This document shows, piece after piece, positions 3,001 to 59,615 of a DNA stretch of 64,000 bases. The position numbers were made by a program, and so were the translations under genes. The stretch is taken from positions 153,183-217,182 of IMG/VR virus record IMGVR_UViG_3300046808_001241. One strand, given 5' to 3'. Position 1 is the first letter of the stretch. Each line of letters opens with the position of its first letter. The notes below the pieces were generated by a model that worked only from the letters and a program-made list of their open reading frames with translations, was not told the DNA's origin and did no database searches.

Positions 3001-3698
3001 CTAAACAACCATTCAGAAGAGGAAAGCACGATTCCTTTTGTGAGGAAGAATTGTTCTGTTGCATCATGAAACAAATTATAGTATCCTGATACAGGAAGGC
3101 TGGTAGATTGATCAAAATAAACGTGATCATCATAAACTTCTTCTACTTGAATTACTAACGAATCTTGAAGAGCAGAAAATTGAGGAACGACAGTTTGTAA
3201 GGATGGGTCTAGTTCGTTGTTTAATGAAGAAAAAGTTTCGAACAAATAGCGGTAAATTTCTTGCTCGATTGATGTAGGAGTTCCAACTGTATTATACTTT
3301 ACTTTGGTGTTTTTAAGTTTATTGCGAAGCTTTAGATAATACAGAGAAATATCTTTAAGCTTTTTAGCAAAGTAAGGAATAGCTAAAAGAAGTTCTTTTT
3401 CGTCAGCTAAATTTACCTTGTTGTACCAAAGGTTTTTTTCTTCTTCAGAAAAGAACAATTGGAGTTGGTCTAGAAGATAAAGATACTTTTGCCTTAAAAC
3501 AAATTTTTGAGAAAGCTGCTTTTCTTTATTGTTAGCAAACCACTCTAAAACATATCTTTGATAGTGGTACGGAGCATCCTTTTCAGCAAGACTAGGTCTG
3601 CGCTGCTTCCATTCAAGATACGAGAACGGAGCATTTAAGTCAGTCTTTGTACCCTGGGGCTCGTTACTAACAATCTGTTTAAGATATTTCGGTTCCAC
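1..3698 (-). CDS. Large virion/baseplate-associated protein (>1230 aa, runs off window start; absent from ORF track)
   Basis: GTG at 3698 (VEPKYLKQIVSNEPQG...), 6 nt after an AATAATTA late-promoter-like motif. Same frame open where spot-checked near 3300-3698, 2460-2515 and 1-65. Co-oriented with baseplate genes. Confidence 0.8.
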   Translation of the reverse strand, partial: MEPKYLKQIVSNEPQGTKTDLNAPFSYLEWKQRRPSLAEKDAPYHYQRYVLEWFANNKEKQLSQKFVLRQKYLYLLDQLQLFFSEEEKNLWYNKVNLADEKELLLAIPYFAKKLKDISLYYLKLRNKLKNTKVKYNTVGTPTSIEQEIYRYLFETFSSLNNELDPSLQTVVPQFSALQDSLVIQVEEVYDDHVYFDQSTSLPVSGYYNLFHDATEQFFLTKGIVLSSSEWLFSSLSLPLSSDVESFVSELTSNILETSDADLYGSFLQNYLSEDKYTVTFTAASSVTETTDVPLQAGNNYFYYPYGTLDNSVAIKGKLTPVALSSLKIEGATAGATIEDSDVVFVKNGERVESAWLYYKDFEQEPKTVKSSLKQNSTTSFIFPFPGYGLSGINIPWTGSSLEFTQGFDFLSKDLKAQVNQAYWSQTLPADTHDVILLNNTTLISSGAIPNKNPNFADQVYIRTDRTEDTTIPYGELSGAWLYRFERTSLPVSPNSTNVLLWPYGTVNEESEFNSYLEKISFAGACNAVSIQDISTSLSIAASSFELADKIYKVNNYKDESDAALECAWLSAAMVQLSGYKTHKQDGFSALFAPGVFTRFLWQGPETSVNDVFATIPHSADCPFTTNTPSVSSFEWQKCTCKQVYYSPFGHTGRQLQDNNMFADCVIEDTTNKLDEFDFGSWRDSLSGTFESSTEIAWYKTKTKHSWGDGAWTSNNLLSTTPLTLKPGKVYFYYRATSKTQEEQFPPYSVNYKFLTPATVWAEAKLQADGTWAPTEKSSQMKLNAGDFIRYERRPTTTSYLLSTVEVENTSENINTVWSSFDKIAINSDVNYTAINWPFQQKPFGSTDPQYPSTQFTEITAINAWRIERLEDGEQQWILNTFAPTFTPPITGTYSIAVTATKVGGARVFESTNIPLISVVPEFSDEEVLLDFTTSTNGFLIEHDLFGWNYNTNKAQQNAPGARPYWAELYLDKSSSTRFKGIYSWGYPNNYIDSYLPNHSPIISPFEISYGSVIDYNRKSYTLEWKQPINYKTFVDDTQWCYLSATTSQFSNLSSIFRSKRQEDLSVYYNTSATPITLTNTKNGLPVEILYYALSSFVWTVSTDVTQDLETPTPELFFSSPKPWANLPNRFYPTVATVPVLEDIYTRDDVGGYFLPQNLGASQFINKEFTTSLKTLNLSGEFLTENEKVHIGGRGLSKQDQDSLYDWQEKNQWLKEPPVAGQLAGAVKKSLTK

Positions 3699-3714
3699 TA
3701 ATAGTAATTATTCG

Positions 3715-4533
3715 TCAAATTGCTAAAAGAGGCACCTTAAATTGCTGTCCGTTAATAGTAATAACCAAGCTAGAAATACATTCTGTAATTGTTTGGCCGG
3801 GTTCTATAGAAACATTGCTCAAAGAGACCGCACCCGTCAAATCCCCTCCGGAAAGAGGCAAAAAGTTTGAGTGAGAATATTGTAAAGAAATTGAGTTGTC
3901 CCAATTTGTTGCAGAATTTGTTTGAACTGTTGAGAATGCGCTATCCCAATTTGCAGAGAGATCCCTTAATTCTGCATCAAATGTATTGTCAATTTCCCAT
4001 GTTGCGGAATTGGTTTGGACGACGGTATAAACCTCATTCCAAGCTCCTGAATTTGACTCTACGAGGGTATATGCAGTTTGCCAGTTTGCTGACAAATCCC
4101 GTAATTCCGTATCAATGGAGTTGTCAGTTTCCCAAGTAGCAGAATTAGCTTGAATCAGAGTATAGCTTTCAATCCACGATGCAGAATTTGATTCAACCGT
4201 TGAAAACGTACTATCCCAATTTGCAGACAAATCCCTTAATTCCGTATCAATGGAGTTGTTAGTTTCCCAAGTAGCAGAATTTGTTTGAATTAACGTATAA
4301 GCTTCTTCCCAAAATGCAGAGTTTGAACTAACAAGAGTATAAACAGATTCCCAATTGCCTGACAAATCTTTTAAATCAGTTCCTTGATATTTAAACAAAT
4401 CAGGAAGACTATCTTGAACTGTTTGAAAAGTTGTTCTTAGTTCCCCTGTAGCACTTGCTTTATATCCTACAAGATAATCCCCACTTTCGAGTGATGTAGA
4501 AAGATCAAAATCTGTTAGCTTCTTGTTTGCCAT
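3715..4533 (-). CDS. Fibre-like structural protein with 45-aa Trp/Ser/Asn repeats
   Basis: ELRDLSANW..(45 aa) units, DNA period 135 nt (3950, 4085, 4220); short C-terminal ITINGQQFKVPL cap. Confidence 0.7.
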   Translation of the reverse strand: MANKKLTDFDLSTSLESGDYLVGYKASATGELRTTFQTVQDSLPDLFKYQGTDLKDLSGNWESVYTLVSSNSAFWEEAYTLIQTNSATWETNNSIDTELRDLSANWDSTFSTVESNSASWIESYTLIQANSATWETDNSIDTELRDLSANWQTAYTLVESNSGAWNEVYTVVQTNSATWEIDNTFDAELRDLSANWDSAFSTVQTNSATNWDNSISLQYSHSNFLPLSGGDLTGAVSLSNVSIEPGQTITECISSLVITINGQQFKVPLLAI

Positions 4534-4537
4534 AATG

Positions 4538-7500
4538 TTAATTATCGCTTATTAAGCGTTTTGTTAAAATGTTGTTGAACATAGTTTCTACCAAACCATT
4601 GTCACCATACCACTCTTCATAGGAGGAAAGTGTATAATCAACGGTTGTGAAATCAGAGTCCCAATTGATTATATTGCCTTTATAACCAATCTGCTCTTCG
4701 TTGTACTCAAAGAAGTAATAATTGTCAAAAATCGGTTCCCTTAATCCTTCAACTTGTATAGCAGAAAGTTGATATTTTAGATTCGGAGAAGGAAGCTCGA
4801 TCGACATATTGTTGATGGTTAAAATGTCTCGTTCGTTTTGAATATCGATTAAGATATTTCCAGCACTTAAAGGAGCAACGTAAACCAGTTGATATTTGTC
4901 GCTGTAAATACGATCTTTTGCAAAAATATACTGACCTGCAGAAACAAATGATGCTTCAGACAACACAGGACCTATGTTTTTGTTTAAATCTGTTTCATAA
5001 ACAACCTGGCCTCTTAATCTGTGTTTTGGTACTGAAAATAGATTTATTAATCTGCTTACTTCTACAGGAAAGTCTGTTCCGTAAATGTTAGCTGGTACAG
5101 ATAATTGTTCTGCAAACGATAATAACTGTGTTATTTCAGCCGTTTCGAAGTCTCCATGAGTCTGTACGAAGTTTGCAATTCTTTCATAGGCCACTCTTCC
5201 GATATCTTCTTTTGTAAGAATTCCGTCTCCAGCAACAGCTGACAAAAATTCATCAAATAAGATAGGATTTTCTTTTAGAATTTCCGGAAGAGCAAGAGAT
5301 TTAAAATACCCAGCACAATCAAACTCTTCATTAACTTTTGCTATATTGAATGAATTGTTTAGATCATACACATTAAACGGGGTAGAAGATCCTCTTACAG
5401 GTAATGAACTATAAGAACCACTATATTTTTGATACCATCTGTTTCCACTCCAATCTCCACCTGCTTGAGCCGACCTTACCTTTTCTTCAGGCAGAGCGCT
5501 TATATAATTTGTTCCACCTATTACTACATAATTTGTGTTTGCAGTAGGAATTAATTCAAATGTGTTCAAACTGCCAAATGGATCAGAAGTTTTAAATACA
5601 AACAACACGTTTTCTTCCGAATCCACAACCCAAACGCGATCAAAAACATCTACTGTCAACCCTCCCCAAATTTCGTTTTCATAATAGGCTTTATGAATAT
5701 CTTCCGGAGTATATCCAGAAACTTCTTCAAACGATTTTGTTGCTCCGTAAAATTTGTAGTGAGTAAATGTTTCGGTTGTATTATTATATTTGCTTAAGAA
5801 ATTGTAGCCGTGGGTAACCCATAGATTGTTGCTACGATCCAACATTATATAGCTTGGTCTGATAGCTCCCTCTATTGTCTTCAGGAGCGTTCCGTCAGTT
5901 CCTGAATGAAGTTGAATTTTATTTGAGTCCCGACAAGCAACCCAAACATTGTTTTCCGGATTTATTGTTAATGAAATAGGAACACTTGTTAAAGGAAGAG
6001 AAGTAGCTCTAAACAACTCTGCTCCAGTGTCTCCATCAAACTTGATCAAAGCAGAGCTGATTGTATGGGAATAACAAGCCCATGCATCGTTGTTGGAGTC
6101 AGTTTCAACTATTGGAGGAGAAACTAGCATCGAACCTTCTGCAGATAAACCAAGTGTTGTGTTTGGGGTGGCTGATAAAACTAAGTTCAATGAAGAATCT
6201 AGCTTTAACAAAACTTCCCTGCTATATAAAGAAATCCAGATATTACTAAAACGGTCAATTGAAATATGAGAAGGGACGTTGTAATCATCTCCAGTATAGC
6301 TAGAAATTGGAATCGTTTGATTAATTCCTAGTCCTCCATTCAAAACATAAAGAACGTCTTGATCCGCGTCTGTTGCATATAGCTTGTTTTGAATTGGATC
6401 AAAAGCCATTCCATAAACGTTCGAAGTACCAGACAATTGATAGTTTGCCAAATTTGCTGCAGTTAAAACAGGAACGCTAACATAAGAAGCAGAGCCCTCT
6501 ACAAGAATTCCCAAATCTTTATAGTATTGAATGTTTCCGCAAATTGTTGAAGAATATGTAACGATATCAATTCTGTTTATTGTGCTAACATTTGGATGGG
6601 AAACATAAACATTCGCATAAATTGGATATCCATCCGGAAAAGAAAAAGCTAAAGTAGAGCTTCCGGTTTCTTGGTTTGCAGCAATTGTGCTTACTGCAAC
6701 TACCACAGAAGAACTAAGAGGAGATAAAGGTGTAATTGTAGTAAAAAGATAACCGCTGGTAGTATTATCTTGTTCGTCAAATGCTTTGAAATACAAAGGG
6801 GCTTCAGAAGAGTTATAAGAAGTACCGTCGACTTCTACTGTATAATAATCTTCAGGAATTAGAGAACCTCCTTCTGCAGACAATACGAGTTTGACTTTGT
6901 TTACACCTCCAAGTTCGTTTGTTCTTGGATACGAAAGAACTTTTGACGGTTGAGTTGATGCATTACCGAACTCGTCAAGCAACGTAGGGTCAAATTCGCA
7001 TGTAATCATCACAGGAATTGGTACGTTTGACCATTTGATTGGATGAATGTCGCTGAGATAGTTTTCTGTGACTTTTAGTCTTGTTGGAATAGCATCATTG
7101 ATCTGCCAAGAAATTACAGCACGAGCAACTTCTGAATTGCTATAACTATAATACGGATATCTTAAAGACTCCGGAGGATATGTAAATCTTTCCGTGCTTA
7201 GCGTTGCAGCTAATAAAAGAGGACAGCCGCCTCCGGAGGCTAAGTCATCAACATAATAAAATGAAGCACTACCAGAAACAGCAACGACTTTATTATTTCT
7301 ATAAATTGGATTGGTTTTTAATACAATAGGACCATCTAAGTCTTGATCAGTTTCGGCATCGACAAACCTCCAACGAGGAACCAAAAATTCCCATTTTTCT
7401 GGAACAGCATAGCTGGGTACTGAGTTTGTGTTAAATGCTTGCAAGACGATTGATAAAGGCTGATCAATTTTTGATGACGTCAATTCAATAGTAAAGGGAG

Positions 7501-9634: not shown

Positions 9635-10135
9635 TTATCTGTTTCTGGATGTTTCTACAAAAATAAATGATTGTTGTTTGACGTCCAAAATAGTATTTAT
9701 AGACGTTGTTGTATTTAAAATAGGGATTGAAACAATAATTGTTATTTCATATTCATTGTCGTCTGGCTTTGCTACTACATTACAACGTTCCAGCTTGACT
9801 CTCGGTTCATACTTGTCAATAGCTGTTACAATCCTTTCCCCAATCATCTGACCGTTTATTTCAGTTATTGGTTCAAAAAGCCATTGATAGATGTCTAAGC
9901 CATACAAAGGAAATAAAAACCTTTGGCCAGGCAGAGTGTTAAAAAGATTTCTTAAAGAATTTCTGATTGCTCTTTCATCAAAATCTACTTGGGTATCGTT
10001 TCCTTCAATTTTTCTTTGTTGAGACGTGCTAAATTCACTAGACTTAGCAAAATCCAAATGCAGATCTTTAAACACATATTGCTTCTGCTTGAATTGCTCT
10101 GCTATTTGTTCCAGATTAGCGATCTTGATTGCCAT
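9635..10135 (-). CDS. Baseplate wedge subunit, gp25/GPW family
   Basis: AIRNSLRNLFNTLPGQRFLFPLYG...LFEP...IDKYEPRV. Confidence 0.9.
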   Translation of the reverse strand: MAIKIANLEQIAEQFKQKQYVFKDLHLDFAKSSEFSTSQQRKIEGNDTQVDFDERAIRNSLRNLFNTLPGQRFLFPLYGLDIYQWLFEPITEINGQMIGERIVTAIDKYEPRVKLERCNVVAKPDDNEYEITIIVSIPILNTTTSINTILDVKQQSFIFVETSRNR

Positions 10136-10199
10136 TAAAATTACTTATTCAAAGAAAATTTGAATGAGATTTTTGAAATAAAATTGATAAATAAGATTC

Positions 10200-10730
10200 A
10201 TGAGCAAATTTGATACGTTACTTGAAGCTGAAGCAGAGAAGTTTCAGTCTGGAGGATATATGGTAGGACAGAGAATCCGCTTTAAGAAAGACGCTTTACA
10301 AAGCGAATATGTTAAAACACGTGCTCAATCCTTTCAAGATATTATTAAAGCTTGTATGGATCCTGGTTTTGATTTGAACCTTCGCATTGGAGCAACTAAA
10401 TCAATTTATCCAACAACAACACAAAATTACGGTAACGGAACTCAACAATCAGCCGGTGTATTTTTTGACATATATATTGAATATGCCCCTGGTTTGTTTA
10501 GAAATCCAATGACAGTACCACTGGAAATTGTTGAAGAAATCCCAGGAGATGAAGGAAGAGGCCCAATTCCCGACAGTCTCCGTCGTAAAAATAAGATTCA
10601 TGGTCCAGAAGAACAAAAAGCTGAATCAGATATTAAGGCAAACGTGAATTTAACAACTCAGAATGTTAAATTGCCTGGCTCCAATAAATGGGATGACACC
10701 AAACCAGGTGGGGGAAATTTCAAACCGTAA
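10200..10730 (+). CDS. Hypothetical protein, possible head-packaged protein
   Basis: 176 aa ORF; GATAAATA 6 nt upstream; N-terminus MSKFDTLLE. Confidence 0.75.
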   Translation: MSKFDTLLEAEAEKFQSGGYMVGQRIRFKKDALQSEYVKTRAQSFQDIIKACMDPGFDLNLRIGATKSIYPTTTQNYGNGTQQSAGVFFDIYIEYAPGLFRNPMTVPLEIVEEIPGDEGRGPIPDSLRRKNKIHGPEEQKAESDIKANVNLTTQNVKLPGSNKWDDTKPGGGNFKP

Positions 10731-11960: not shown

Positions 11961-12014
11961 GTTATAAGCTGACTTTACTCGAAAAAGTACACGACTTAGA
12001 TTAAGTAATCTTGT

Positions 12015-13718
12015 ATGTTTACACGCGTATTTGATACAAAGTCTTTTATCGATAAATCCAAACAGAAATTTAGTTCCAAATTTAGTTACGAGGATACGGT
12101 ATATACAAAATCAACAAATAGACTTAACGTAATTTGCAGCATTCACGGCAAAGTCGAAATTCTTCCAGGAGTGCACTTGTCTGGAGCGGGATGCCCGAGC
12201 TGTTCGAGGGCGTTAAATGGCTTGAGTCATAGAATGGACACTGAAACGTTTATTAAAAGAGCTCAAGCTAAACATAATAATTTTTACAATTACGACAAAG
12301 CAACATTTCAAGGTAGTTTAAAAAACCTAATAGTCACTTGTCCTGTGCACGGAGATTTCGCAATTCAAGCAAGTCGACATATAAATAACGGAGCTGGTTG
12401 CTCAAAGTGTGGTTTTATTCGTCGTGTAAAAAAATGCACTACCCCACTCGATGTGTTTTTAGAAAAGACATCCAAAAAACCAAATTTCGAAAATTATGAT
12501 TTCAGTTTAGTTAACTTTAAAAATAAAAAAGAATGGGTTACCGTTATTTGTAAAAAGCACGGAGAGTATAAAACTAAACCTAGATATATTGATAATAGTG
12601 CGTTTTTCGGTTGTAGTCAGTGCAAATGCGAAAGCAGAACTTTCACTACTGATACTTTTATCGAAAAAGCTAAACAAATACATGCCGAAAGATATCTTTA
12701 TGATAGAGTCGAATATAAAGATTCACACACAGAGGTGACACTAATCTGTAAAACTCACGGAGATTATATTTGCAAACCTTATGTACACTTGGCGGGAGGA
12801 GGCTTTTGTCCAAGCTGCACTAACAATGGTGTAAGTTCTTATGAGAGAGAAATAAAATTATTTTTGCAACAAAACGGCATCAGCATAGAATCTTCTTTTA
12901 GAGGATTTGACGGATTGAAGGAAATAGATTTAATTTGTCACAACAAAAAAATAGGAATTGAAGTTAATGGGTTATATTGGCACTGTGACTTATACAAAGA
13001 AAAAAACTTTCATAAACACAAAACGGAAACTTTGTTAAAGCAGGGATATCGACTAATTCATATATTTGAAGACAGCTGGCTTCTCAAAAAAGACGTTTGT
13101 TTGTCAATTTTATTGAATGCGTTTAATAAAACTCCCAATAAAATTTACGCAAGAAAGTGTGAACTAAAACTAATTTCAGATAAAGAGTCAAAACATTTTT
13201 TAAATGCAAACCACGTACAAGGTTCTTGCGTTTCTAAAATAAGATATGGTTTATTCTATAATAACGAGCTTGTATCGGTTATGACCTTCGGCTCTAACAG
13301 AAAAAATTTGGGCAATAAATCAAAACCAAATGAATACGAACTACTAAGGTTTTGTAACAAAACCTACACCAATGTCGTTGGAGGAGCTTCTAAACTGTTT
13401 GCTTCTTTCATCAAACAACACAACCCTCGGAAAATAACAAGCTATTGCAATAGAAGTATCGGAACGGGAAATCTATACAAGCAGCTTGGATTTCAGTTTT
13501 TATACAATACGCCTCCAAACTATTTTTATGTCAGAGGAAGTACAAGATTGCCGAGATTTAAATTTCGAAAAGATGTGTTAATTAAACAAGGACATGATAA
13601 AAACAAAACAGAAGCTTGCATTATGAAGGAATTAGGGTATAATAGAATTTATGACTGTGGAAGCATGAAATTTGAATGGACAAATAATCAATCATTTTCC
13701 GAAGATGACTTGTTTTAA
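12015..13718 (+). CDS. Free-standing Hef-like homing endonuclease (repeated CxxHG/CPxC zinc modules, PD-(D/E)xK/Vsr-like nuclease domain)
   Basis: Four FIxKA..H..Y.Y...C..HG...CPxC repeats; EIDLICHNKKIGIEVNGLYWH; LIHIFEDSW; ELLRFC..VVGGASKLF; lies between nrdB and nrdA. Confidence 0.8.
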   Translation: MFTRVFDTKSFIDKSKQKFSSKFSYEDTVYTKSTNRLNVICSIHGKVEILPGVHLSGAGCPSCSRALNGLSHRMDTETFIKRAQAKHNNFYNYDKATFQGSLKNLIVTCPVHGDFAIQASRHINNGAGCSKCGFIRRVKKCTTPLDVFLEKTSKKPNFENYDFSLVNFKNKKEWVTVICKKHGEYKTKPRYIDNSAFFGCSQCKCESRTFTTDTFIEKAKQIHAERYLYDRVEYKDSHTEVTLICKTHGDYICKPYVHLAGGGFCPSCTNNGVSSYEREIKLFLQQNGISIESSFRGFDGLKEIDLICHNKKIGIEVNGLYWHCDLYKEKNFHKHKTETLLKQGYRLIHIFEDSWLLKKDVCLSILLNAFNKTPNKIYARKCELKLISDKESKHFLNANHVQGSCVSKIRYGLFYNNELVSVMTFGSNRKNLGNKSKPNEYELLRFCNKTYTNVVGGASKLFASFIKQHNPRKITSYCNRSIGTGNLYKQLGFQFLYNTPPNYFYVRGSTRLPRFKFRKDVLIKQGHDKNKTEACIMKELGYNRIYDCGSMKFEWTNNQSFSEDDLF

Positions 13719-17189: not shown

Positions 17190-17263
17190 GATAAATAAAT
17201 TTGCTCAGTGCTCCAAAGGGCTGAACAACAAACATAACTCGCTTAATAAAGGAGATATTAAAA
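17190..17263 (+). promoter_or_regulatory. Late promoter and structured hsp20 leader with SD
   Basis: GATAAATA 17190-17197; 5' arm 17203-17222 complementary to 17769-17790; TAACTCGCTT motif; AAGGAG. Confidence 0.75.
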
Positions 17264-17758
17264 ATGACAAATAAACTAACTACATACGTACCTGGACACT
17301 ATGCGTCCACAGAGCGTCACTTCAGCCAGCTGCCCGCTCTGTTTTCATCCCGCTGGTTCAACTCAATCTTTGACGATACTTTCCCAGAGAAAGTTCTTGA
17401 AGATCAAAATGCCTTCTACCCTTATAACATTTCCGTTGTAAAAGAAGGAGAAGATACCCAAAAATACATCCTCGAAGTAGCTCTTGCTGGTGTTGGTAAA
17501 AACAACATCTCGATTGACGTCAAAGATGATGTGTTGACAATTGGAGTATTGAAAGAAGATAAGGAACCCGAACAAGGTCAATCTTATCTGAAGCGTGGAA
17601 TTAGTCGTCGAAAGTCGACTTTTTCATACAAGCTTGATACAAACCAAGTAGATGTGAAGAAAATTCAATCTGCTTACATCGATGGTCTTCTAACAGTAAC
17701 AATTCCTGTTAAGAAGAAAGAAACCCATAAAGTTGATATTAAGGTTAATATTGACTAA
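17264..17758 (+). CDS. Small heat shock protein, Hsp20/alpha-crystallin family
   Basis: YPYNI, LEVALAG, YLKRGISRR, YIDGLLTVTIP. Confidence 0.95.
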   Translation: MTNKLTTYVPGHYASTERHFSQLPALFSSRWFNSIFDDTFPEKVLEDQNAFYPYNISVVKEGEDTQKYILEVALAGVGKNNISIDVKDDVLTIGVLKEDKEPEQGQSYLKRGISRRKSTFSYKLDTNQVDVKKIQSAYIDGLLTVTIPVKKKETHKVDIKVNID

Positions 17759-19072: not shown

Positions 19073-19098
19073 ATCTTTAATTATTCAAAAGAACTCAA

Positions 19099-20913: not shown

Positions 20914-20930
20914 TTAGGCTTACTTATCGC

Positions 20931-21137
20931 TTAAACTTCTTTTGCCCAACTGCGCGGAGTCATTTCAAATCCAAGATCTTTAATGGTTTTGTTGGTATTT
21001 CCGCTCAATTCAATTTGATATGTTTCAACTGGAGCTTGGCAAGTGTTTGCAGCAGTTTCGTCAGTATAGACATTGCAAATAGCAAAGTCAAAACCTTTTT
21101 CAGGATCAATATTAATTATGTCGATTCGATGTAGCAT
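20931..21137 (-). CDS. Small hypothetical protein
   Basis: 68 aa with TAAATA 5 nt upstream. Confidence 0.65.
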   Translation of the reverse strand: MLHRIDIINIDPEKGFDFAICNVYTDETAANTCQAPVETYQIELSGNTNKTIKDLGFEMTPRSWAKEV

Positions 21138-21152
21138 AATGTTATTTAGTAT

Positions 21153-22529: not shown

Positions 22530-22537
22530 GTTAGTAT

Positions 22538-23917: not shown

Positions 23918-23921
23918 AATG

Positions 23922-40229: not shown

Positions 40230-40237
40230 ACCGGTAT

Positions 40238-41972: not shown

Positions 41973-41991
41973 CTTATAAGCTACTTAAGGT

Positions 41992-42471: not shown

Positions 42472-42475
42472 GGAA

Positions 42476-44965: not shown

Positions 44966-44973
44966 GCCAAGCT

Positions 44974-45001
44974 ATCCTAAAACAACATGGAGATATGTCA
45001 A
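44974..45001 (-). promoter_or_regulatory. Sigma70-like promoter of clpC
   Basis: TTGACA-16-TAGGAT on minus strand, ATG 8 nt downstream. Confidence 0.6.
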
Positions 45002-45170
45002 CCTCGTAACGATAATTACATCTGTGTTAAACTTTATTGATGTTCTTTTAAAAAATAGTTCTTCGCTGCAAGCGAAGATCTATACGGCTGCTTCCAAAGC
45101 TGCAGAAAATCCTGCTATTGGAATTACAATTATTAATCCTGCTGCATCCCATGTCATCAAAGACTGTGCA

Positions 45171-48543: not shown

Positions 48544-49371
48544 TTAGATTGCTGCTTGGATTGCTGTCATGAGGTTTGTTACTCTAGTGTCGAGGAGGGC
48601 GAGGTCGATGGACTCGCCGATGGAGTAAAAGGAGAGGCGGGAATTGCTGTATGTAGTAGCCCCGTTTGTTCGGTAAACAAAAATTTCTGCGGATAAAGGC
48701 TCAACAGAGGTTCTTGTTAGAGTGTGAGAGCCTTGTTTTGCTCTGAAAATATAATTTAAATTATTGTTTCGGCTTAGTCCTAAAAGACCAGTGGCATCCC
48801 CTTTTGATGAAATGGTATCATAGGTGGTGGCGGGGTTTCGGCTTCTCGTAGTCAGGTTTTGAGTTGCGGAGCTTCTGACAAAGTATGTCTGTCCGCTGTT
48901 TGAATTTCCTGCTCCAATATAGGCAGGCCCACCAATTGTTTGCGCGGTCGTTGCATAAACGCTTAAATGCTGGTTATCTTGCGGGTCGGCGTTGTTATTT
49001 CGCCGAGAGTTTAAATACTTAGTTGAGCCGTTTCCGATCAAACCTGTTTCTCGATTATAATCATCAGAAACAAAGTTAAAATTGGTAGGAGCAGCTCCAA
49101 CAAGAGGAACCAAAGCTCCGTTTAATGTCCTTGCTCCAGCAAGAATGCAAGATGCTTTTAAAGAGTTCCAAATACCATCAGACTTACATCCAATGATAAA
49201 AGAATCAATTGCTTGCTTAACAGGATCTTCCAAAGAAGCTCCGTCAGCAGCCTCTACTGCAGAGATATAAGCTGCAGCATTTGCATCAGATACCGAATAA
49301 CCAGCAGGACCGGTTTCAAATATAGTTTTACCTTGTATTTTTGTGTTACCTTGTAGTTTAATTAGTGCCAT
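48544..49371 (-). CDS. Cassette 1 gene A, putative virion accessory protein
   Basis: AYISAVEAADG...KASCILAGARTLNGALVPL; paralog of 54406-55218. Confidence 0.8.
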   Translation of the reverse strand: MALIKLQGNTKIQGKTIFETGPAGYSVSDANAAAYISAVEAADGASLEDPVKQAIDSFIIGCKSDGIWNSLKASCILAGARTLNGALVPLVGAAPTNFNFVSDDYNRETGLIGNGSTKYLNSRRNNNADPQDNQHLSVYATTAQTIGGPAYIGAGNSNSGQTYFVRSSATQNLTTRSRNPATTYDTISSKGDATGLLGLSRNNNLNYIFRAKQGSHTLTRTSVEPLSAEIFVYRTNGATTYSNSRLSFYSIGESIDLALLDTRVTNLMTAIQAAI

Positions 49372-49430
49372 ATGTGGGATTTATTTATCAAAAAAAACAA
49401 ATTTTCAAACCTTGCATAAATAATTTCCTC

Positions 49431-50417
49431 ATGAATATTTTAATTACTGGGGGATTAGGCTTTATTGGTTCAAATTTTATTGAGTTAATCATTAATAAAC
49501 CGGAAGTAACCTGTGTTGTTAATATTGATTGTCCTTCTAGGCTTTCCGCTGCAGCAGACACAGAAAACTGTAAACAATTTAAAGAAAATCCAAAATACCA
49601 ATTCCATGACATTTGGTTGGAGCACTTGGACGTAAAGTTAAACATTGATAGATTCAAACAAATTATCGAAACCAACGAGATTACACACATTGTTCACTTT
49701 GCCGCAGAATCGCATGTTGATAATTCCATAACAGGTCCCAGACAGTTTGTATTGTCAAACATTATGGGAACGTTTAATCTTTTAGAGCTTTGCAGACAGT
49801 TTTATCCAACGATTCGTTTCCATCACATTTCTACCGATGAAGTTTATGGAAGCTTAGGAGAATTTGGAGCATTCACAGAAGAAACTCCTTATGATCCTTC
49901 TTCCCCATATTCAGCTTCTAAGGCAGCTTCGGACCATCTTGTAAGAGCTTATTTTAGAACATACAAGCTCCCAGTTACTATTTCAAATTGTTCAAACAAC
50001 TATGGACCAAACCAACATTTGGAAAAGTTCATGCCAGTTGTTATTAGTTCCATTTTAAACAATAAAAAAATTCCTGTCTATGGAACTGGATCAAACGTTA
50101 GAGATTGGATATATGTCGAAGACCATTGTGAAGCAGTTTGGAATGTTCTAATCAAAGGCAAACTTGGAGAATCATATAACATTGGAGGAAATTGTGAAAA
50201 ACAAAACCTAGAAATTATTACTGAAATATGCAAGCAAATGGATAAAGATCCGAATGACTTTATCGTATTTGTAGAAGACAGAAAAGGTCATGATTACAGA
50301 TATGCCATTGACAATATCAAATATTTGAGTACTATTGGAGAGAAACCAAAAACATCTTTTGAAGAAGGTGTTCAAAAAACAATTCAATATTATGAAAACC
50401 GAATACTACACACCTGA
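49431..50417 (+). CDS. rfbB: dTDP-glucose 4,6-dehydratase
   Basis: ILITGGLGFIGSNF, HFAAESHVD, STDEVYG, YSASK, NNYGP, RDWIYVEDH; start reassigned to 49431. Confidence 0.92.
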   Translation: MNILITGGLGFIGSNFIELIINKPEVTCVVNIDCPSRLSAAADTENCKQFKENPKYQFHDIWLEHLDVKLNIDRFKQIIETNEITHIVHFAAESHVDNSITGPRQFVLSNIMGTFNLLELCRQFYPTIRFHHISTDEVYGSLGEFGAFTEETPYDPSSPYSASKAASDHLVRAYFRTYKLPVTISNCSNNYGPNQHLEKFMPVVISSILNNKKIPVYGTGSNVRDWIYVEDHCEAVWNVLIKGKLGESYNIGGNCEKQNLEIITEICKQMDKDPNDFIVFVEDRKGHDYRYAIDNIKYLSTIGEKPKTSFEEGVQKTIQYYENRILHT

Positions 50418-53257: not shown

Positions 53258-53273
53258 ATGATTAAGTAAGTGA

Positions 53274-53672
53274 ATGAAGTCAAAAGACCAAATTCTTTTA
53301 GAAAATGCATACGCTCGTACCTATGGAATCAGAAATGTAAAAGATTCTGAAGTAGAGCAAATGATTGAAGCTCTTAATAAGATTCAATCTCAAGTAAGTG
53401 TTATGCATCATGGTCAACTTACAAATCTTAAACAACATCTCGAGAGTGTTGTTGGTAAGATCGACAGTCGTCTGACTTCAAGCAAGACAACAAAAGATCT
53501 TGCAGACAAACATGGAGTTTCTGTTGAAGAGATCGAAGCCCAACTCGAAAAGGGAGTTAAGGTTGAGATGGAGCATACAAAGAACACAGACTCTGCTCGT
53601 AAGATTGCTCTTGATCATCTTGCAGAAGTTCCAAACTATTACGACAAGCTTGCTCAAGTAGAAGCAAAGTAA
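53274..53672 (+). CDS. DUF5661-like protein
   Basis: QLEKGVKVEMEHT...KIALDHLAEVPNYYDKL. Confidence 0.75.
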   Translation: MKSKDQILLENAYARTYGIRNVKDSEVEQMIEALNKIQSQVSVMHHGQLTNLKQHLESVVGKIDSRLTSSKTTKDLADKHGVSVEEIEAQLEKGVKVEMEHTKNTDSARKIALDHLAEVPNYYDKLAQVEAK

Positions 53673-54405: not shown

Positions 54406-55218
54406 TTAGATTGCGGCTGCGAGGGCGGTCATGAGGTCAGAGACGCGGGTGTCAAGGAGCGCAAGGTTAAGGGATTCGCCGATGGAGTAAAAGTTTAAAC
54501 GACTGTTGGTTGGGCCGTTTAACGCTCCATTATATGATCTAGCAAAAACAAATAAATTGGTGGAAGACGGAGCCGAGCTTGCCGCGGCGCTAGTCCCCGT
54601 GCTTTTTAGATATCTCATTTGTGTAGTTGTTGGTCCAGATCTGGAAGCACCAATAAAACCAACAGGATAATTTCCAACATTTACTGCTTGCCAACTAGCC
54701 GCACGTACTATAAAACCTGTATTTGCAATGATGTGAGAAGTAGAACCTCCGCTAGCGACACTTGCACCAAATAGATACCCATCTGTTCCAACAATGCTAG
54801 TCGAGTGTTTATTTACAGCCATATGAAAATTGTCTTGTGGATCGGCGTTGTTTGCTCTGTTAGAATTTAAATATTTCGTTGAACCATTGCCTTTAAGTCC
54901 TGTCTCGCGGTTATAATCTGCGGAGACAAAATTAAAATTGGTTGGGGCAGTTCCAACAAGAGGAACCAAAGCTCCATTCAATGTCCTTGCTCCAGCAAGA
55001 ATACAAGAAGCTTTTAAAGAGTTCCAAATACCATCAGACTTACATCCGACAATAAAGTTTTCAATAGCAATCTTAACAGGATCTTCAAGAGTAGCTCCAT
55101 CAGCAGCCTCTACTGCAGAGATATAAGCTGCAGCGTTTGCATCGGATACCGAATAACCAGTATCGAAAATAGTTTTACCTTGAATGTTTGTTTTACCGAG
55201 TAGTTTGATCATTGACAT
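54406..55218 (-). CDS. Cassette 2 gene A
   Basis: Paralog of 48544-49371; start reassigned to MSMIKL. Confidence 0.8.
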   Translation of the reverse strand: MSMIKLLGKTNIQGKTIFDTGYSVSDANAAAYISAVEAADGATLEDPVKIAIENFIVGCKSDGIWNSLKASCILAGARTLNGALVPLVGTAPTNFNFVSADYNRETGLKGNGSTKYLNSNRANNADPQDNFHMAVNKHSTSIVGTDGYLFGASVASGGSTSHIIANTGFIVRAASWQAVNVGNYPVGFIGASRSGPTTTQMRYLKSTGTSAAASSAPSSTNLFVFARSYNGALNGPTNSRLNFYSIGESLNLALLDTRVSDLMTALAAAI

Positions 55219-55251
55219 ATGGGACTTATTTATCAAAAAAAAACAAATTTT

Positions 55252-56145
55252 CTAACCTCTTACGAAAAATTCTTTAAAACTTTCAGAGGTTTGTGTGCGA
55301 GCTCGTAAACTAGCCATTGTATCTTTGGGTCCCAGCATCTTTTGAGCGGTAAGTTGAGAACCTTTCAATACTTCATCAGAGATTCCATACTTCTTTGGAT
55401 CCAAGCCATGTTTCGTTAACAGTTTCTTTAGCTGCACTCGAATCTTTTCTTTGTCTGGTCCAGTTGACATATGAAGTTGTTTGATCAGCTCCACGATTTC
55501 CTTTTCATGTGGTTGGAGTTCTTTTACCTCTGCAGTCGAAGATGCTTTGTAGTAACCATCTTCTAACGGACTTTCGATAAGAATGTCATCTTCTGGAACG
55601 TTTGGATAAACATGCTTGGCAAATGGAATGATATATTTGTCTAATATTTCTTGTTGAGTATCCCAAATGGAAACGACGACATTGTTCTTGATCTTCCACA
55701 TTCTTCCGAGCTTGTAGTGATCTGCAGTTTCGATATTATATTTCGTATAGACCGTGAAGTTTGGATACTTCTTTTCTAGTTGTTCGAAGTAGCTGTCCAA
55801 GTCTTTATCTGGAGAGAAGAACCGAACTCCGAGTTCTTTCAAGCTATTATAATCAAATTCAAGATGACCCAAGAGTTCAAAGAAGTTTGTGTGAGAAGTA
55901 GCGTGCTCCCCTTCTTCTCCAATGTCTTTAGAAACAACGCACAGGCCAAGCTTTGAATCAAACGAATTGATTTCGTCCTTATCTTTGTTCCATGGATTTA
56001 AATGATCAGGAACAATAAGAAGTTCATCAACAATGAATGTGATTGGATTTCCTTCCTGTTCATCATAGGCATAGTATTCATCTTCGAACTTAATAGTGTC
56101 CGGAGATTCGAACAATACATTCCTAACAATCTGGTTAAAATCCAT
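55252..56145 (-). CDS. Hypothetical acidic protein, possibly head-packaged
   Basis: Start MDFNQIVRNVLFE, 5 nt after TATAAATA. Confidence 0.75.
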   Translation of the reverse strand: MDFNQIVRNVLFESPDTIKFEDEYYAYDEQEGNPITFIVDELLIVPDHLNPWNKDKDEINSFDSKLGLCVVSKDIGEEGEHATSHTNFFELLGHLEFDYNSLKELGVRFFSPDKDLDSYFEQLEKKYPNFTVYTKYNIETADHYKLGRMWKIKNNVVVSIWDTQQEILDKYIIPFAKHVYPNVPEDDILIESPLEDGYYKASSTAEVKELQPHEKEIVELIKQLHMSTGPDKEKIRVQLKKLLTKHGLDPKKYGISDEVLKGSQLTAQKMLGPKDTMASLRARTQTSESFKEFFVRG

Positions 56146-56167
56146 AGGATTATTTATAAGTACTTGG
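56146..56167. promoter_or_regulatory. 22-bp bidirectional late promoter
   Basis: CAT-aggat-TATTTATAAGTA-cttgg-GTG: TATAAATA (-) and TATAAGTA (+) share a central TATA. Confidence 0.7.
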
Positions 56168-57064
56168 GTGAAGTTCGACCAGTTCAGTACAATTATATTA
56201 GAAGCTAAGTTCCGACAAAGTTCTAAGCAATTGGTGGAACAGGTCAAGAAGATTGCTTCCATCTATTTTAATCGATATAATTCAAATAACGTTAATATAA
56301 AAGAACTGATTGAGCAGGATAAAATCGCTTCATTCAAGGACAACAAGCATTACAAAGAGTACTTTGATTACTTTGAGCTTAAGAAGATGCCGAAGTACTT
56401 TACTCCTTCGGATAATTTATTAGCAACTGTGACAATAACTGACTTGGAAACAAAGGAACCCAAGAAAATTGATGTTTATTGCATATATGGAGACATTGGA
56501 GATACTGACTATGCAGCTTATGGACATGAATATAATTCAATCAATATCTATGACAATAACATAAAAGGTCTTTCCGAACGTCTTGTTCAATCAAAGATCC
56601 TTCATGAACTCACACATGGGTTTCAACAACATAAAGAGCAAACAAAGAAGTTCCAACAAATGATTGGAAAGGATAAAGTATTTGATTGGGAAACGTACTT
56701 TAAAGAACCAATCGAGTTTGACGCCCATCTGAACGAAATTGCATACAATATCAATCAAAAGCACAGAGAGTTCTTGAAGGGTATCATGGCAACAAAAGAA
56801 CTTCCAATCAAAAAATTGCTGAAGATGAGACTGGAAACGTTCATGAAAGAATTGAAAGTCTTTATTCAGGCTCCGCTTGAAGCATATACAGAACTGAAAG
56901 AACTTCCTTTACCGAAGTGGACCGAATCATTCCAAGACTTTATTTCTACAATTAAGACCAACAAGAAGCTTTGGAATAAATTTAAGTTAAAGCTCCAGAA
57001 CCTTTATAATGATTTAGAAAAGAAGAGTGTTAGAATCATGCAGAGAAATTCCCTTATAAGCTGA
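56168..57064 (+). CDS. HExxH zinc metallopeptidase-like protein
   Basis: ILHELTHGFQ followed by Y...P.EFDAH; GTG start (MKFDQFSTIILE). Confidence 0.7.
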   Translation: MKFDQFSTIILEAKFRQSSKQLVEQVKKIASIYFNRYNSNNVNIKELIEQDKIASFKDNKHYKEYFDYFELKKMPKYFTPSDNLLATVTITDLETKEPKKIDVYCIYGDIGDTDYAAYGHEYNSINIYDNNIKGLSERLVQSKILHELTHGFQQHKEQTKKFQQMIGKDKVFDWETYFKEPIEFDAHLNEIAYNINQKHREFLKGIMATKELPIKKLLKMRLETFMKELKVFIQAPLEAYTELKELPLPKWTESFQDFISTIKTNKKLWNKFKLKLQNLYNDLEKKSVRIMQRNSLIS

Positions 57065-57104
57065 ATAATCTGCTTGATTGTTGTCTGGATTCATAAGTAA
57101 TAGA

Positions 57105-57380
57105 ATGAGATCCGCTTGCAGAAATTTTGTACAAAGATTACAAAAACATAGAACGATTGCTTTGCCGCCGAAGCACGAATTGTTTCACAGACAAACAACT
57201 ACATCAATAGCTCAACCAATTAACTATCTACCAGAAGAAAATTTTACATTCAATCTTTCCAATTCAACCGATACAGACGGAGACGGTTATACAGACGAAG
57301 TAGAAACACTAGCAGGGACAGACATTAATGATTCAGCAGACTTTCCTGTTTCCCTTTTTAATGTATTCAATGGAGTTTAA
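57105..57380 (+). CDS. Small protein with Ca-binding DTDGDG repeat
   Basis: TDTDGDGYTDEVETLAGTD; CATAAGTA 5 nt upstream of ATG. Confidence 0.6.
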   Translation: MRSACRNFVQRLQKHRTIALPPKHELFHRQTTTSIAQPINYLPEENFTFNLSNSTDTDGDGYTDEVETLAGTDINDSADFPVSLFNVFNGV

Positions 57381-58895: not shown

Positions 58896-59225
58896 CTAAT
58901 GCAGTTTCCCAAACCAATAAGCAGCATCAGCGACAACGTCTGGATTGATCTTCTTGTAGTCTCCCAGATGACCAAAATGAAGATGGTGGTTGCAAGACTT
59001 GATTCCTTCGCATAATGTAATCAAATTGGTTGGATCCAGTTCTTTAGAAGGATCGGCAGAAAAAGAGATAATATGGTGGATTTCCAATTTCTTTGTTCCT
59101 CCACATACTGCACAAGTTGGAAACATTTGCAGATGCTTCTTCCTAACCGCTGGCCACTTGGAAGAACGCTTGGAACCAACCTTGGCTTTTCCTTGAATAA
59201 CGTCCTTTATGTGCTTTAGGATCAC
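58896..59225 (-). CDS. Small HNH endonuclease
   Basis: CAVCG...EIHHI...NLITLC...HHL.FGH. Confidence 0.85.
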   Translation of the reverse strand: MILKHIKDVIQGKAKVGSKRSSKWPAVRKKHLQMFPTCAVCGGTKKLEIHHIISFSADPSKELDPTNLITLCEGIKSCNHHLHFGHLGDYKKINPDVVADAAYWFGKLH

Positions 59226-59238
59226 AACAGTATTTAGT

Positions 59239-59472
59239 TTAGATGGTCTTCTTCAGGCGATCGTCCTGCCTCTTGATTTCTTCCAGATAATGAATGAGGA
59301 TCTTAATATCCTGATCTTTCATGTAGATCTCTTTGCCAGCTCGTTCTAAAGCCCGGCCAGCTTCATTCATCCTCTTCTTATACTCATCAGCAACAAATCC
59401 ATCATAATATAAGCCGACTCCAATTGCTCCGAAACATATTCCCAAAAGCCAGCTTGAAATGATATCCTTCAC
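59239..59472 (-). CDS. Small membrane-anchored coiled-coil protein
   Basis: N-terminal TM segment followed by coiled coil. Confidence 0.65.
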   Translation of the reverse strand: MKDIISSWLLGICFGAIGVGLYYDGFVADEYKKRMNEAGRALERAGKEIYMKDQDIKILIHYLEEIKRQDDRLKKTI

Positions 59473-59489
59473 AACAACTAATTAAGATT

Positions 59490-59615
59490 ATGACTGCAGA
59501 AGAACTACAGGAAGAAAACAAAGAACTTAAAGAACAAATCGAAGAACTAAAACAAATTATAGATAGCCTTCGAAACGTTACAGCAACAAACAACCTGAAG
59601 ACCTTTGGAAATTAA
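59490..59615 (+). CDS. 41-aa coiled-coil peptide (not in track)
   Basis: MTAEELQEENKELKEQIEELK...; 5 nt after palindromic TAATTA, terminator follows. Confidence 0.6.
   Translation: MTAEELQEENKELKEQIEELKQIIDSLRNVTATNNLKTFGN

What the first reader, a model, noticed from the sequence alone, without database searches (positions are those of the whole stretch)
3698..59490. Most late genes have their own promoter 5-10 nt from the start codon: large-scale leaderless translation
Seen in sequence: TAA[A/G/T]TA precedes more than 25 start codons, most often with a 5-nt spacer (4533, 21137, 22529, 25310, 27307, 35958-gene at 37205, 40229, 42471, 53274, 56145, 56168, 57105, 59225, 59490) and otherwise 6-10 nt (3698, 10135, 10200, 12015, 20913, 23917, 28434, 28913, 49371, 49431). 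There is no room for an SD; clear SDs are seen only at hsp20 and 16897. Established: T4 gp55 late promoters are TATAAATA, with initiation a few nt downstream. Inference: +1 falls on or near the start codon, gene by gene, even within apparent operons.
Basis: partly seen in the sequence, partly recalled or inferred. Interest (0 to 1): 0.7.

Follow-up and report, generated by a model that had tools for sequence, protein, structure and literature searches.

The report
Phage late promoters abut start codons
In this uncultured freshwater T4-like phage the late-promoter box TAAATA sits 5-10 bases before about a third of all start codons and ribosome-binding sites are essentially absent, so many messages probably begin at the start codon itself, which T4 and its cyanophage relatives do not do.

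Summary
In the window, TAA[A/G/T]TA-N5-ATG occurs 16 times against 3.2 expected. Across the 217-kb genome, 32 of 220 TAAATA copies lie exactly 5 nt before an ATG, and 45 of 49 such ATGs open an ORF. The phage has a T4-type capsid gene and a gp55 late-sigma homologue. The motif precedes structural genes (terminase, sheath, tube, portal, baseplate), not replication genes. T4's TATAAATA box spans -13 to -6, so a 5-nt spacer puts +1 on the A of ATG. Shine-Dalgarno motifs are not enriched (28/273 against 33-43 in control windows; T4 control 23/33). Early and replication genes carry sigma70-like -35/-10 promoters 6-10 nt from their ATGs, so the design is genome-wide. T4 and Syn9 place the box about 20-30 nt upstream. 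Eighty related metagenomic loci, and 12 genes of the SAR11 phage HTVC008M, share the N5 spacing. Limits: no start-site data could be obtained, RNA contigs span gene junctions, and only about 40% of window genes have their own box, many others being coupled by overlapping stop/start codons. Promoter identity is well supported; leaderless translation is a strong inference. The phage also encodes ribosomal protein bS21.

The parts
3696..3710 (-). TAATTA-N6-GTG, start of a 1625-aa structural ORF that runs off the window
4531..4544 (-). TAATTA-N5-ATG, 272-aa ORF
10133..10147 (-). TAAGTA-N6-ATG, gp25 baseplate wedge gene (PF04965). The next two genes (starts 9633 and 7822) are coupled by a 1-nt gap or overlap
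10188..10202 (+). TAAATA-N6-ATG, 176-aa ORF, divergent partner of 10135
12002..12017 (+). TAAGTA-N7-ATG, HNH homing-endonuclease gene
19070..19083 (-). TAATTA-N5-ATG, 300-aa ORF
20911..20926 (-). TAAGTA-N7-ATG, virion structural protein (phrog_1645)
21135..21148 (-). TAAATA-N5-ATG, 68-aa ORF
22527..22540 (-). TAAATA-N5-ATG, 458-aa paralogue 1. The TAA of the box is the stop codon of the upstream gene
23915..23931 (-). TAAATA-N8-ATG, 459-aa paralogue 2
25308..25321 (-). TAAATA-N5-ATG, 462-aa paralogue 3
27305..27318 (-). TAAATA-N5-ATG, 662-aa ORF. The same 25-nt upstream sequence recurs at genome position 113138
28432..28449 (-). TAAATA-N9-ATG, 78-aa ORF
28911..28925 (-). TAAATA-N6-GTG, 156-aa ORF
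30769..30780 (-). TAAGTA-N3-ATG, 364-aa ORF (atypically short spacer; doubtful member)
37203..37216 (-). TATAAATA-N5-ATG, 415-aa ORF (full T4 consensus)
40227..40240 (-). TAAATA-N5-ATG, T4_baseplate protein (PF12322)
41970..41987 (-). TAAGTA-N9-ATG, 274-aa ORF
42469..42482 (-). TAAATA-N5-ATG, 159-aa ORF (in-frame ATG inside the longer mechanical ORF 41992-42528)
49369..49387 (-). TAAATA-N10-ATG, 275-aa ORF
49417..49433 (+). TAAATA-N8-ATG, 328-aa ORF, divergent partner of 49371
53263..53276 (+). TAAGTA-N5-ATG, 132-aa ORF (DUF5661)
55216..55232 (-). TAAATA-N8-ATG, 270-aa paralogue of 48544-49371
56143..56170 (.). Back-to-back divergent boxes: TATAAATA-N5-ATG on the minus strand (start 56145) and TATAAGTA-N5-GTG on the plus strand (start 56168)
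57094..57107 (+). TAAGTA-N5-ATG, 91-aa ORF
59223..59236 (-). TAAATA-N5-GTG, 109-aa ORF
59479..59492 (+). TAATTA-N5-ATG, 41-aa ORF (weakest gene evidence)
60742..60760 (-). TAAATA-N10-ATG, 271-aa Laminin_G_3 protein
63314..63531 (+). TAATTA-N8-ATG (63328) and the phage-encoded ribosomal protein bS21 gene
28930..28969 (+). sigma70-like TTGACT-N17-TAnnnT with a 7-nt gap to the ATG at 28967 (approximate span)
44963..45003 (-). sigma70-like TTGACA...TAnnnT with an 8-nt gap to the ATG at 44965 of the Lon-like protease gene (approximate span)
17240..17758 (+). hsp20 with a genuine AAGGAG Shine-Dalgarno site: the contrast case

Best explanation
TAAATA (less often TAAGTA or TAATTA, usually preceded by A) is the core of this phage's gp55-dependent late promoter. 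In this lineage the box has been moved right up against the coding sequence. It lies at -11 to -6 relative to the start codon in the commonest class (N5) and 1-5 nt further upstream in the rest. Host RNA polymerase carrying the phage's gp55-like sigma would then start transcription on the A of the AUG or within about 5 nt of it. The resulting mRNAs are leaderless or nearly so. They would be translated without a Shine-Dalgarno interaction, presumably by direct binding of ribosomes to a 5'-terminal AUG. Genes that follow without their own box are mostly joined to the upstream gene by overlapping or abutting stop and start codons, which suggests termination-reinitiation. Early and replication genes use the same layout with sigma70-like -35/-10 promoters. 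What is shown: the motif, its spacing, its statistics, its gene class, its conservation, the gp55 homologue, the lack of SD sites and the contrast with T4 and Syn9. What is inferred: the position of +1, and that the leaderless RNA is the species that gets translated.
For: Spacing statistics are. The extended consensus is A(-13) 53%, A(-12) 60%, TAAATA, A(-5) 64%, T(-1) 62%, with nothing conserved from -30 to -14. A gp55 homologue is present (phrog_234, E 1e-17), as are a T4-type capsid gene and a weak gp45-like clamp hit. Genes carrying the motif include the large terminase, tail sheath, tail tube, portal, head-tail adaptor, gp25 and T4_baseplate proteins and virion proteins. DNA polymerase, helicases, gp46/47, UvsX and gp55 itself lack the motif. 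The T4 box occupies -13 to -6 (PMC2988020), so N5 gives +1 on the A of ATG. SD sites are not enriched, and the same test works on T4. 68 of 70 motif-adjacent starts are ATG. The TAA of the box is the upstream stop codon in only 11 of 45 N5 cases, and 17 of 45 have no upstream ORF end nearby. 22 copies of TTGACnnGTCC carry an ATG 35-39 nt downstream, which leaves a 6-10 nt gap between the -10 element and the ATG. Spacer histograms peak at N5 in this phage (29) and in HTVC008M (12), but at about N25-29 in T4 and N20-28 in Syn9. The HTVC008M N5 sites coincide with the annotated starts of its tape measure, DNA end protector, head closure and tail-tube-cap genes. 29 related loci give N5/N6 counts of 56/48. 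Orthologous and paralogous starts keep the box while the spacer sequence drifts.
Against: No 5' ends were mapped. The one metatranscriptome that holds this phage is shallow, and its contigs bridge the starts at 23917, 25310 and 27307 and the sheath/tube junction, so read-through RNA (or contaminating DNA) exists. No gp33 homologue was found, and gp45 was found only weakly. T at -13 of the T4 consensus is not conserved (9%). The capsid gene, probably the most heavily expressed, has no adjacent box and in relatives carries AGGAG on a leader. So the host ribosome can use SD sites, and leaderless initiation is not obligatory. The host is unknown, so its ability to translate leaderless mRNA efficiently is unknown.
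Confidence: 0.68

Rival explanations
1. The boxes are late promoters, but the translated molecules are mainly long overlapping read-through transcripts, as in T4 late transcription. Internal AUGs would be found by SD-independent initiation on unstructured A/U-rich RNA (for example via ribosomal protein S1) or by reinitiation. Leaderless RNAs would be a minor by-product of genome compaction.
For: RNA contigs cross several promoter/start junctions. 88 of 273 genes are coupled by overlap or a gap of 4 nt or less. The 5' ends of coding regions are weakly structured in all gene classes, not only the motif class. In 18 of 45 N5 cases an upstream stop codon lies inside or beside the box.
Against: Compaction alone does not explain a spacer peak one nucleotide wide at the distance that puts +1 on the AUG. 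It also does not explain why two unrelated promoter types show the same geometry, or the near-exclusive use of ATG.
Confidence: 0.17
2. TAAATA-N5-AUG is read at the RNA level and not as a promoter. It could be a ribosome-recruiting element for ribosomes that carry the phage's own bS21, or a cleavage site for an endoribonuclease that trims polycistronic RNA just before each AUG.
For: The phage encodes bS21, a protein that sits beside the anti-SD sequence (PMC9723584; PMC10491246). The fixed distance to the AUG would also suit an RNA signal.
Against: The sequence is the known gp55 box and a gp55 homologue is present. The motif is confined to late-type genes, while early genes have a sigma70-type promoter at the same place. 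In T4 and Syn9 the same box sits about 20-30 nt upstream, where it is established or predicted as a promoter.
Confidence: 0.08
3. The pattern has no function: it is a by-product of TAA stop codons, A+T-rich intergenic DNA and short gene spacing.
For: The genome is 36.7% G+C, and 11 of 45 N5 boxes contain the upstream stop codon.
Against: Dinucleotide shuffles give 3.2 against 16 observed. Same-composition hexamers and the reverse complement show no peak. 17 of 45 N5 cases have no upstream ORF end nearby, and the box also occurs in divergent intergenic regions. It is conserved in relatives.
Confidence: 0.02

Closest known systems
Bacteriophage T4 late transcription (gp55 sigma, gp33 co-activator, gp45 clamp; TATAAATA box at -13 to -6)
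   Same: The core box is the same, there is no -35 element, a gp55 homologue is present and the box precedes structural genes.
   Different: In T4 the box-to-ATG distance peaks near 25-29 nt and SD sites are the rule. Here the peak is 5 nt and SD sites are absent. The T at -13 is not conserved. gp33 was not found.
Late promoters of cyanomyoviruses (S-PM2 NATAAATA, Syn9; Kyanoviridae)
   Same: The relaxed consensus NATAAATA fits this phage (PMC2984593). Some virion proteins are 65-68% identical.
   Different: Syn9, S-PM2 and P-SSM2 show no N5 excess (3-6 hits against 3-6 in the control). The Syn9 spacer is about 20-28 nt. The capsid protein here is only about 34% identical to any isolate's, and there is no psbA.
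Pelagibacter (SAR11) myophage HTVC008M
   Same: It has a sharp N5 peak (12 ORF-opening sites), at the annotated starts of structural genes. It also encodes bS21 (PMC9723584, PMC7029224).
   Different: HTVC008M keeps SD sites at about half of its genes (101 of 191 against 26 and 12 in control windows). The arrangement has not been described for it. Late-promoter prediction was reported as unsuccessful in pelagimyophages (PMC7029224).
Thermus phages phiYS40 and Lalka27a (experimentally leaderless transcripts)
   Same: Most of these phages' transcripts begin with the A or G of the initiator codon (bioRxiv 10.64898/2026.04.20.719267). This is the same design principle.
   Different: They are unrelated phages with different promoters (for example a TAGGGT -10 element), and their host phylum is rich in leaderless genes. 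There the 5' ends were mapped; here they are inferred.
Lambda cI leaderless mRNA from pRM; leaderless genes of Actinobacteria and Deinococcus
   Same: A -10-type element lies a fixed 6-7 nt before an AUG, with no SD site and a requirement for AUG (PMC10491246; the rest is from my own knowledge).
   Different: Those are single genes or host-wide traits. They do not involve a phage late sigma factor applied to dozens of structural genes.
Poxvirus late promoters (TAAATG initiator overlapping the start codon)
   Same: An analogy only, recalled from my own knowledge: a late-promoter element fused to the start codon.
   Different: This is a eukaryotic virus with its own polymerase and 5' poly(A) heads. 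No homology is implied.

Membership tests
T4-type gp55-dependent late promoter | An 8-bp A+T box, TATAAATA or a close variant, about one helical turn upstream of +1 | tested here: met
   The TAAATA core is enriched and is preceded by A at -12 in 60% of N5 sites. T at -13 occurs in only 9%, so the consensus is nATAAATA, as reported for S-PM2.
T4-type gp55-dependent late promoter | No conserved -35 element | tested here: met
   Base frequencies from -30 to -14 in 45 N5 sites are near background.
T4-type gp55-dependent late promoter | The phage encodes a gp55 late sigma factor | tested here: met
   ORF at genome positions 44849-45382: T4 gp55 E 6e-5; phrog_234 'late sigma transcription factor' E 1e-17.
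T4-type gp55-dependent late promoter | gp33 co-activator and gp45 sliding clamp present | tested here: inconclusive
   Syn9 gp33 found nothing. T4 gp45 and PF09116 found nothing. One 242-aa ORF matches phrog_947, a processivity factor, at E 6e-7. These proteins are small or divergent, so the negative results are weak.
T4-type gp55-dependent late promoter | Located before late (virion) genes and not before replication genes | tested here: met
T4-type gp55-dependent late promoter | Transcription starts about 6 nt after the box, dependent on gp55 | not testable with these tools
   Only low-depth assembled metatranscriptome contigs were available.
Leaderless mRNA | The primary 5' end lies at the start codon or within about 5 nt of it | not testable with these tools
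   Inferred from geometry only. RNA contigs gave no 5'-end resolution.
Leaderless mRNA | No Shine-Dalgarno site upstream | tested here: met
   28 of 273 against 33-43 in control windows. Positive control in T4: 23 of 33 against 3-4.
Leaderless mRNA | A promoter -10-type element at a fixed short distance from the start codon | tested here: met
   Late box peak at N5. Gap between the sigma70-like -10 element and the ATG is 6-10 nt.
Leaderless mRNA | Strong preference for AUG as initiator | tested here: met
   68 of 70 motif-adjacent longest-ORF starts are ATG. A few GVG cases exist (3698, 28913, 59225).

The most novel reading that the evidence does not exclude
An abundant aquatic branch of the T4 superfamily has given up SD-led translation. 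It includes this freshwater clade (335 capsid relatives in IMG/VR) and, in part, the SAR11 myophage HTVC008M. Both temporal classes of promoter are fused to the start codons, so the phage proteome is made from leaderless mRNAs. The phage-encoded ribosomal protein bS21, whose role in viruses is unexplained, would be the matching adaptation: it would retune host ribosomes near the anti-SD sequence and mRNA exit channel to favour leaderless or SD-less phage messages late in infection.
Probability: 0.2. Interest if true: 0.85.

Novelty: new variant of a known kind. Interest (0 to 1): 0.62.

Why it matters
If the start sites are where the geometry predicts, this is a T4-like phage lineage whose structural proteins are made from leaderless mRNAs. 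That would be a major departure from the textbook T4 scheme of leader plus SD site, which translational repressors act on. It would show that the gp55 system can be combined with a translation mode so far documented phage-wide only in Thermus phages.

It has practical value for annotation. The box pins down start codons in these genomes, including four ORFs in the window whose longest-ORF starts are probably wrong. It may also explain why standard late-promoter searches failed in pelagimyophages (PMC7029224).

It also gives a concrete and testable idea for the unexplained bS21 genes of aquatic phages. A cultured system, HTVC008M on Pelagibacter, is available in which to test it.

Tried and rejected
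- **Megablast of 8.4 kb against isolate phages:** no match. The phage has no close cultured relative.
- **psbA search:** none found, so there is no evidence that this is a cyanophage.
- **Metatranscriptome contigs (2 read-laying runs, runs X3, X17, X18, X20):** depth was 2-19 and the contigs are assembled, so there are no 5'-end pile-ups. They show only that structural genes are present in an RNA library and that contigs cross junctions. The look-up of encoding contigs for the tail tube protein returned the same RNA contig and nothing new.
- **Adapter sequence after genome position 72813:** considered as an RNA 3' end, but no terminator is visible there, so it was dropped.
- **Stop-codon artefact explanation:** rejected.
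- **Folding energy of +1 to +40:** weaker than in internal windows in every gene class, so it does not discriminate.
- **gp33 and gp45 searches:** negative or weak.
- **tblastn of the bS21 protein against isolate phages:** no hit. The idea of correlating bS21 with the N5 layout across many phages could therefore not be pursued beyond HTVC008M (bS21 known from the literature) against T4, Syn9, S-PM2 and P-SSM2.
- **Literature searches for leaderless T4-like or cyanophage late genes:** found no description. The Syn9 start-site paper (Doron et al., recalled from memory) is not in the searchable library and could not be checked.
- **Host identification:** not achieved. The atlas neighbours of the bS21 protein hint weakly at Pseudomonadota.
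Full report
**What the window is.** The window is bases 153183-217182 of a 217,182-bp IMG/VR virus record with terminal repeats, which indicates a circular assembly. Its G+C content is 36.7%. The genome encodes a T4-type major capsid protein (PF07068, E 2e-89). Replication genes found are a gp43-type DNA polymerase, gp41-type helicase, gp46/47, UvsX and gp32. Virion genes found are a T4-type large terminase, tail sheath, tail tube, portal, prohead protease and gp25/baseplate proteins. The capsid protein is at most about 34% identical to that of any isolate. Yet 335 relatives (the 80 kept are 76-96% identical) occur in IMG/VR, and the DNA is found in freshwater metagenomes. This is therefore a deep, uncultured freshwater branch of the T4 superfamily. 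It has no psbA and its host is unknown.

**Check of the observation.**
- In the window, TAADTA-N5-ATG occurs 16 times against 3.16 +/- 1.84 in dinucleotide shuffles (0 of 100 reached 16).
- Genome-wide, without any gene model, 32 of 220 TAAATA copies are followed by ATG after exactly 5 nt and 14 after 6 nt. The background is about 3. The reverse-complement word TATTTA is flat.
- TAAATA is the rarest of the 15 permutations of its letters but has the highest N5-ATG count.
- 45 of 49 TAA[AGT]TA-N5-ATGs open an ORF of at least 40 aa.
- 29% of all TAAATA copies lie within 14 nt upstream of a called start.
- With crude gene calls, 86 of 273 genes (28 of 69 in the window) have the box 3-11 nt from the start. 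N5 is the mode, then N6, with a tail to N10.
- G and T at the fourth position are also enriched; C is not.

**It is not a stop-codon artefact.** In the 45 N5 cases, the TAA of the box is the upstream gene's stop codon in 11. A stop codon overlaps the last two letters of the box in 7. In 17 cases no ORF ends nearby. The box also occurs on both sides of divergent intergenic regions (10135/10200, 49371/49431, 56145/56168).

**It is the late promoter.**
- The genome encodes a gp55 homologue (T4 gp55 E 6e-5; phrog_234 'late sigma transcription factor' E 1e-17).
- The aligned N5 sites give the consensus A-A-TAAATA-A, with nothing conserved between -30 and -14. This matches the description of T4 late promoters as a lone 8-bp TATA box without a -35 site (PMC2988020). 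It also matches the relaxed NATAAATA consensus of S-PM2 (PMC2984593).
- The box precedes the large terminase, tail sheath, tail tube, portal, head-tail adaptor, gp25, T4_baseplate proteins, tail-fibre-like proteins and virion proteins.
- DNA polymerase, helicases, gp46/47, UvsX and gp55 itself lack it.
- gp33 was not found, and a gp45-like clamp was found only weakly. These results are inconclusive because the proteins are small or divergent.

**Geometry.** The review places the T4 box at -13 to -6. TAAATA followed by 5 nt and then ATG therefore puts the A of the start codon at +1. N6 to N10 would give leaders of 1-5 nt, too short for an SD site. SD-like cores are indeed not enriched: 28 of 273 genes in the -18 to -4 window, against 33-43 in control windows. 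The same test on annotated T4 genes gives 23 of 33 against 3-4. The few real SD sites include hsp20 (AAGGAG). 68 of 70 motif-adjacent starts are ATG, as expected if ribosomes must recognise a 5'-terminal AUG.

**The same layout holds for early genes.** A family of 22 sigma70-like promoters (TTGACnnGTCC, 17-nt spacer, TAnnnT-like -10 element) mostly lies in the first 25 kb of the genome. In 20 of them an ATG lies 33-39 nt from the T of TTGAC, with modes at 36 and 39. That leaves 7 or 10 nt between the -10 element and the ATG, and each ATG opens a 53-288-aa ORF. DNA polymerase, gp46, UvsX and, in the window, the Lon-like protease (start 44965) and small ORFs at 28967, 30876, 50779 and 61951 have similar -35/-10 pairs 5-8 nt from the ATG. 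Two unrelated promoter classes both end where +1 would fall on or just before the AUG. This is the strongest argument from sequence alone for leaderless transcripts.

**Genes without their own box.** 88 of 273 genes (17 of 69 in the window) start within 4 nt of, or overlap, the upstream stop codon. One example is the run gp25 (10135, own box), then the baseplate wedge gene (9633), then a 1094-aa protein (7822). The units are therefore short operons whose first cistron is leaderless and whose later cistrons are coupled. 'Gene by gene' is true for some runs: of the eleven genes from 19072 to 28913, eight have a box. These include three paralogues (45-57% identical) that each kept it. It is not true for all late genes.

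**Comparison with other phages.** Box-to-ATG spacer histograms, counting only ATGs that open ORFs of 60 aa or more, give the following.

| Phage | Result |
|---|---|
| This phage | sharp peak at N5 (29) |
| T4 | broad peak at N25-29 |
| Syn9 | broad peak at N20-28 |
| Pelagibacter phage HTVC008M | sharp peak at N5 (12) |

The N5 pattern is at background in Syn9, S-PM2 and P-SSM2. In HTVC008M the N5 sites coincide with the annotated starts of the tape measure, DNA end protector, head closure and tail-tube-cap genes, among others. HTVC008M nevertheless keeps SD sites at about half of its genes (101 of 191 against 26 and 12 in control windows). In 29 long loci from relatives of the present phage, N5 and N6 are again the peaks (56 and 48). 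Orthologous starts (adaptor, scaffold-like gene, protease and others) keep the box while the spacer sequence varies. The capsid gene is the exception: it has no adjacent box, and in most relatives it has AGGAG on an A-rich leader. The host ribosome can therefore use SD sites.

**RNA evidence.** One freshwater metatranscriptome (X3) holds this phage. Its assembled contigs cover structural genes at depth 2-19. Some of them cross the starts at 23917, 25310 and 27307 and the sheath/tube junction. This shows that junction-spanning RNA exists (or DNA carry-over). It says nothing about primary 5' ends. The central inference is therefore untested.

**Literature.** I found no description of leaderless late genes in T4-like phages or cyanophages. 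For pelagimyophages, late-promoter prediction by the cyanophage method was reported as unsuccessful (PMC7029224). Phage-wide leaderless transcription is documented for Thermus phages phiYS40 and Lalka27a.

**A possibly connected feature.** The window encodes ribosomal protein bS21 (63328-63531; PF01165, E 6e-17), preceded by TAATTA-N8. bS21 is a core gene of pelagimyophages and is absent from cyanomyophages (PMC7029224). HTVC008M bS21 enters E. coli ribosomes (cited in PMC9723584). bS21 supports the anti-SD region, and E. coli ribosomes lacking uS2 and bS21 handle the lambda cI leaderless mRNA differently (PMC10491246). Phage bS21 and the N5 layout co-occur in the two lineages examined and are both absent from T4, Syn9, S-PM2 and P-SSM2. 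That is suggestive, but it rests on very few independent cases.

**Verdict.** The box is very probably the gp55-type late promoter. Its placement predicts leaderless or near-leaderless late mRNAs, and a parallel placement of sigma70-like promoters predicts the same for early genes. This is a new variant of known things: the T4 late promoter and leaderless phage transcripts. It is shared by an abundant freshwater clade and partly by a cultured SAR11 phage. It still needs start-site mapping.

Noticed in passing
window 63328-63531 (+); upstream 63228-63310: A phage-encoded ribosomal protein bS21 (PF01165, E 6e-17). Upstream lie a TAAATA box, then a 13-bp inverted repeat (ctccagtacagag / ctctgtactggag) with a T-run, then TAATTA-N8-ATG. 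This may be a terminator or attenuator in front of the gene.
   Followed up: partly
genome 185-25,400 (outside the window; L091/L092), also window about 51,620 and 52,255 (genome 204804, 205438): A family of 22 early-type promoters, TTGACnnGTCC-N12-TAnnnT-like. Each lies 35-39 nt before the ATG of a small ORF, often with a conserved aCTGTT just before the ATG. They predict leaders of 0-4 nt for early genes as well.
   Followed up: partly
L092:9603-10036 (genome 24603-25036) and L092:10054-12047: A phage-encoded tmRNA (RF00023, 125.7 bits) with an unusually long predicted tag ending in YELAA, next to a cluster of about 11 tRNA genes. With bS21 this makes a sizeable translation-related gene set.
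   Followed up: partly
window 21153-25310 (-) and genome 110,300-115,500 (+): Three tandem paralogues of about 460 aa (45-57% identical), each with its own TAAATA box. The 25 nt upstream of window start 27307 are identical to those upstream of genome position 113138, and small ATGTCTTGT ORFs recur in both places. This suggests two related tail-fibre-like gene clusters in opposite orientation.
   Followed up: partly
window 48218-49371 (-), 54080-55236 (-), 59665-60744 (-): A repeated two-gene cassette: a 104-aa protein (81% identical between two copies) plus a protein of about 272 aa (59% identical). A third, more distant copy carries a Laminin_G_3 domain. Each larger gene has TAAATA at N8-N10.
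   Followed up: partly
window 12015-13718 (+) and genome 104560-105993 (-): Two related HNH homing-endonuclease genes (phrog_559/3339). One sits just upstream of the ribonucleotide reductase region in the window and the other immediately downstream of the capsid gene. The reductase large-subunit match (14755-16404, 549 aa) covers only profile positions 204-795 of 975, and unannotated ORFs of 255 and 81 aa precede it. The gene may therefore be split.
   Followed up: no
L004 / genome 107538-107580 and related loci: The capsid gene has no adjacent late box. Most relatives have AGGAG 8-12 nt upstream on an A-rich leader. In this genome only AAAGGAAAA about 22 nt upstream remains.
   Followed up: partly
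window 42476-44965 (-): An 829-aa Lon-like ATP-dependent protease (phrog_4871, E 8e-263), with a sigma70-like promoter whose -10 element ends 8 nt before its ATG.
   Followed up: no
window 56143-56170: Two late boxes share one 12-bp core, TATTTATAAGTA, and fire in opposite directions towards starts 23 nt apart (ATG 56145 on the minus strand, GTG 56168 on the plus strand).
   Followed up: partly
L095:12813 (genome 72813): In RNA run X3 a 2.1-kb contig covering the sheath 3' half and the tail tube ends in Illumina adapter sequence 48 nt past the tube stop codon. No terminator hairpin is evident there.
   Followed up: partly
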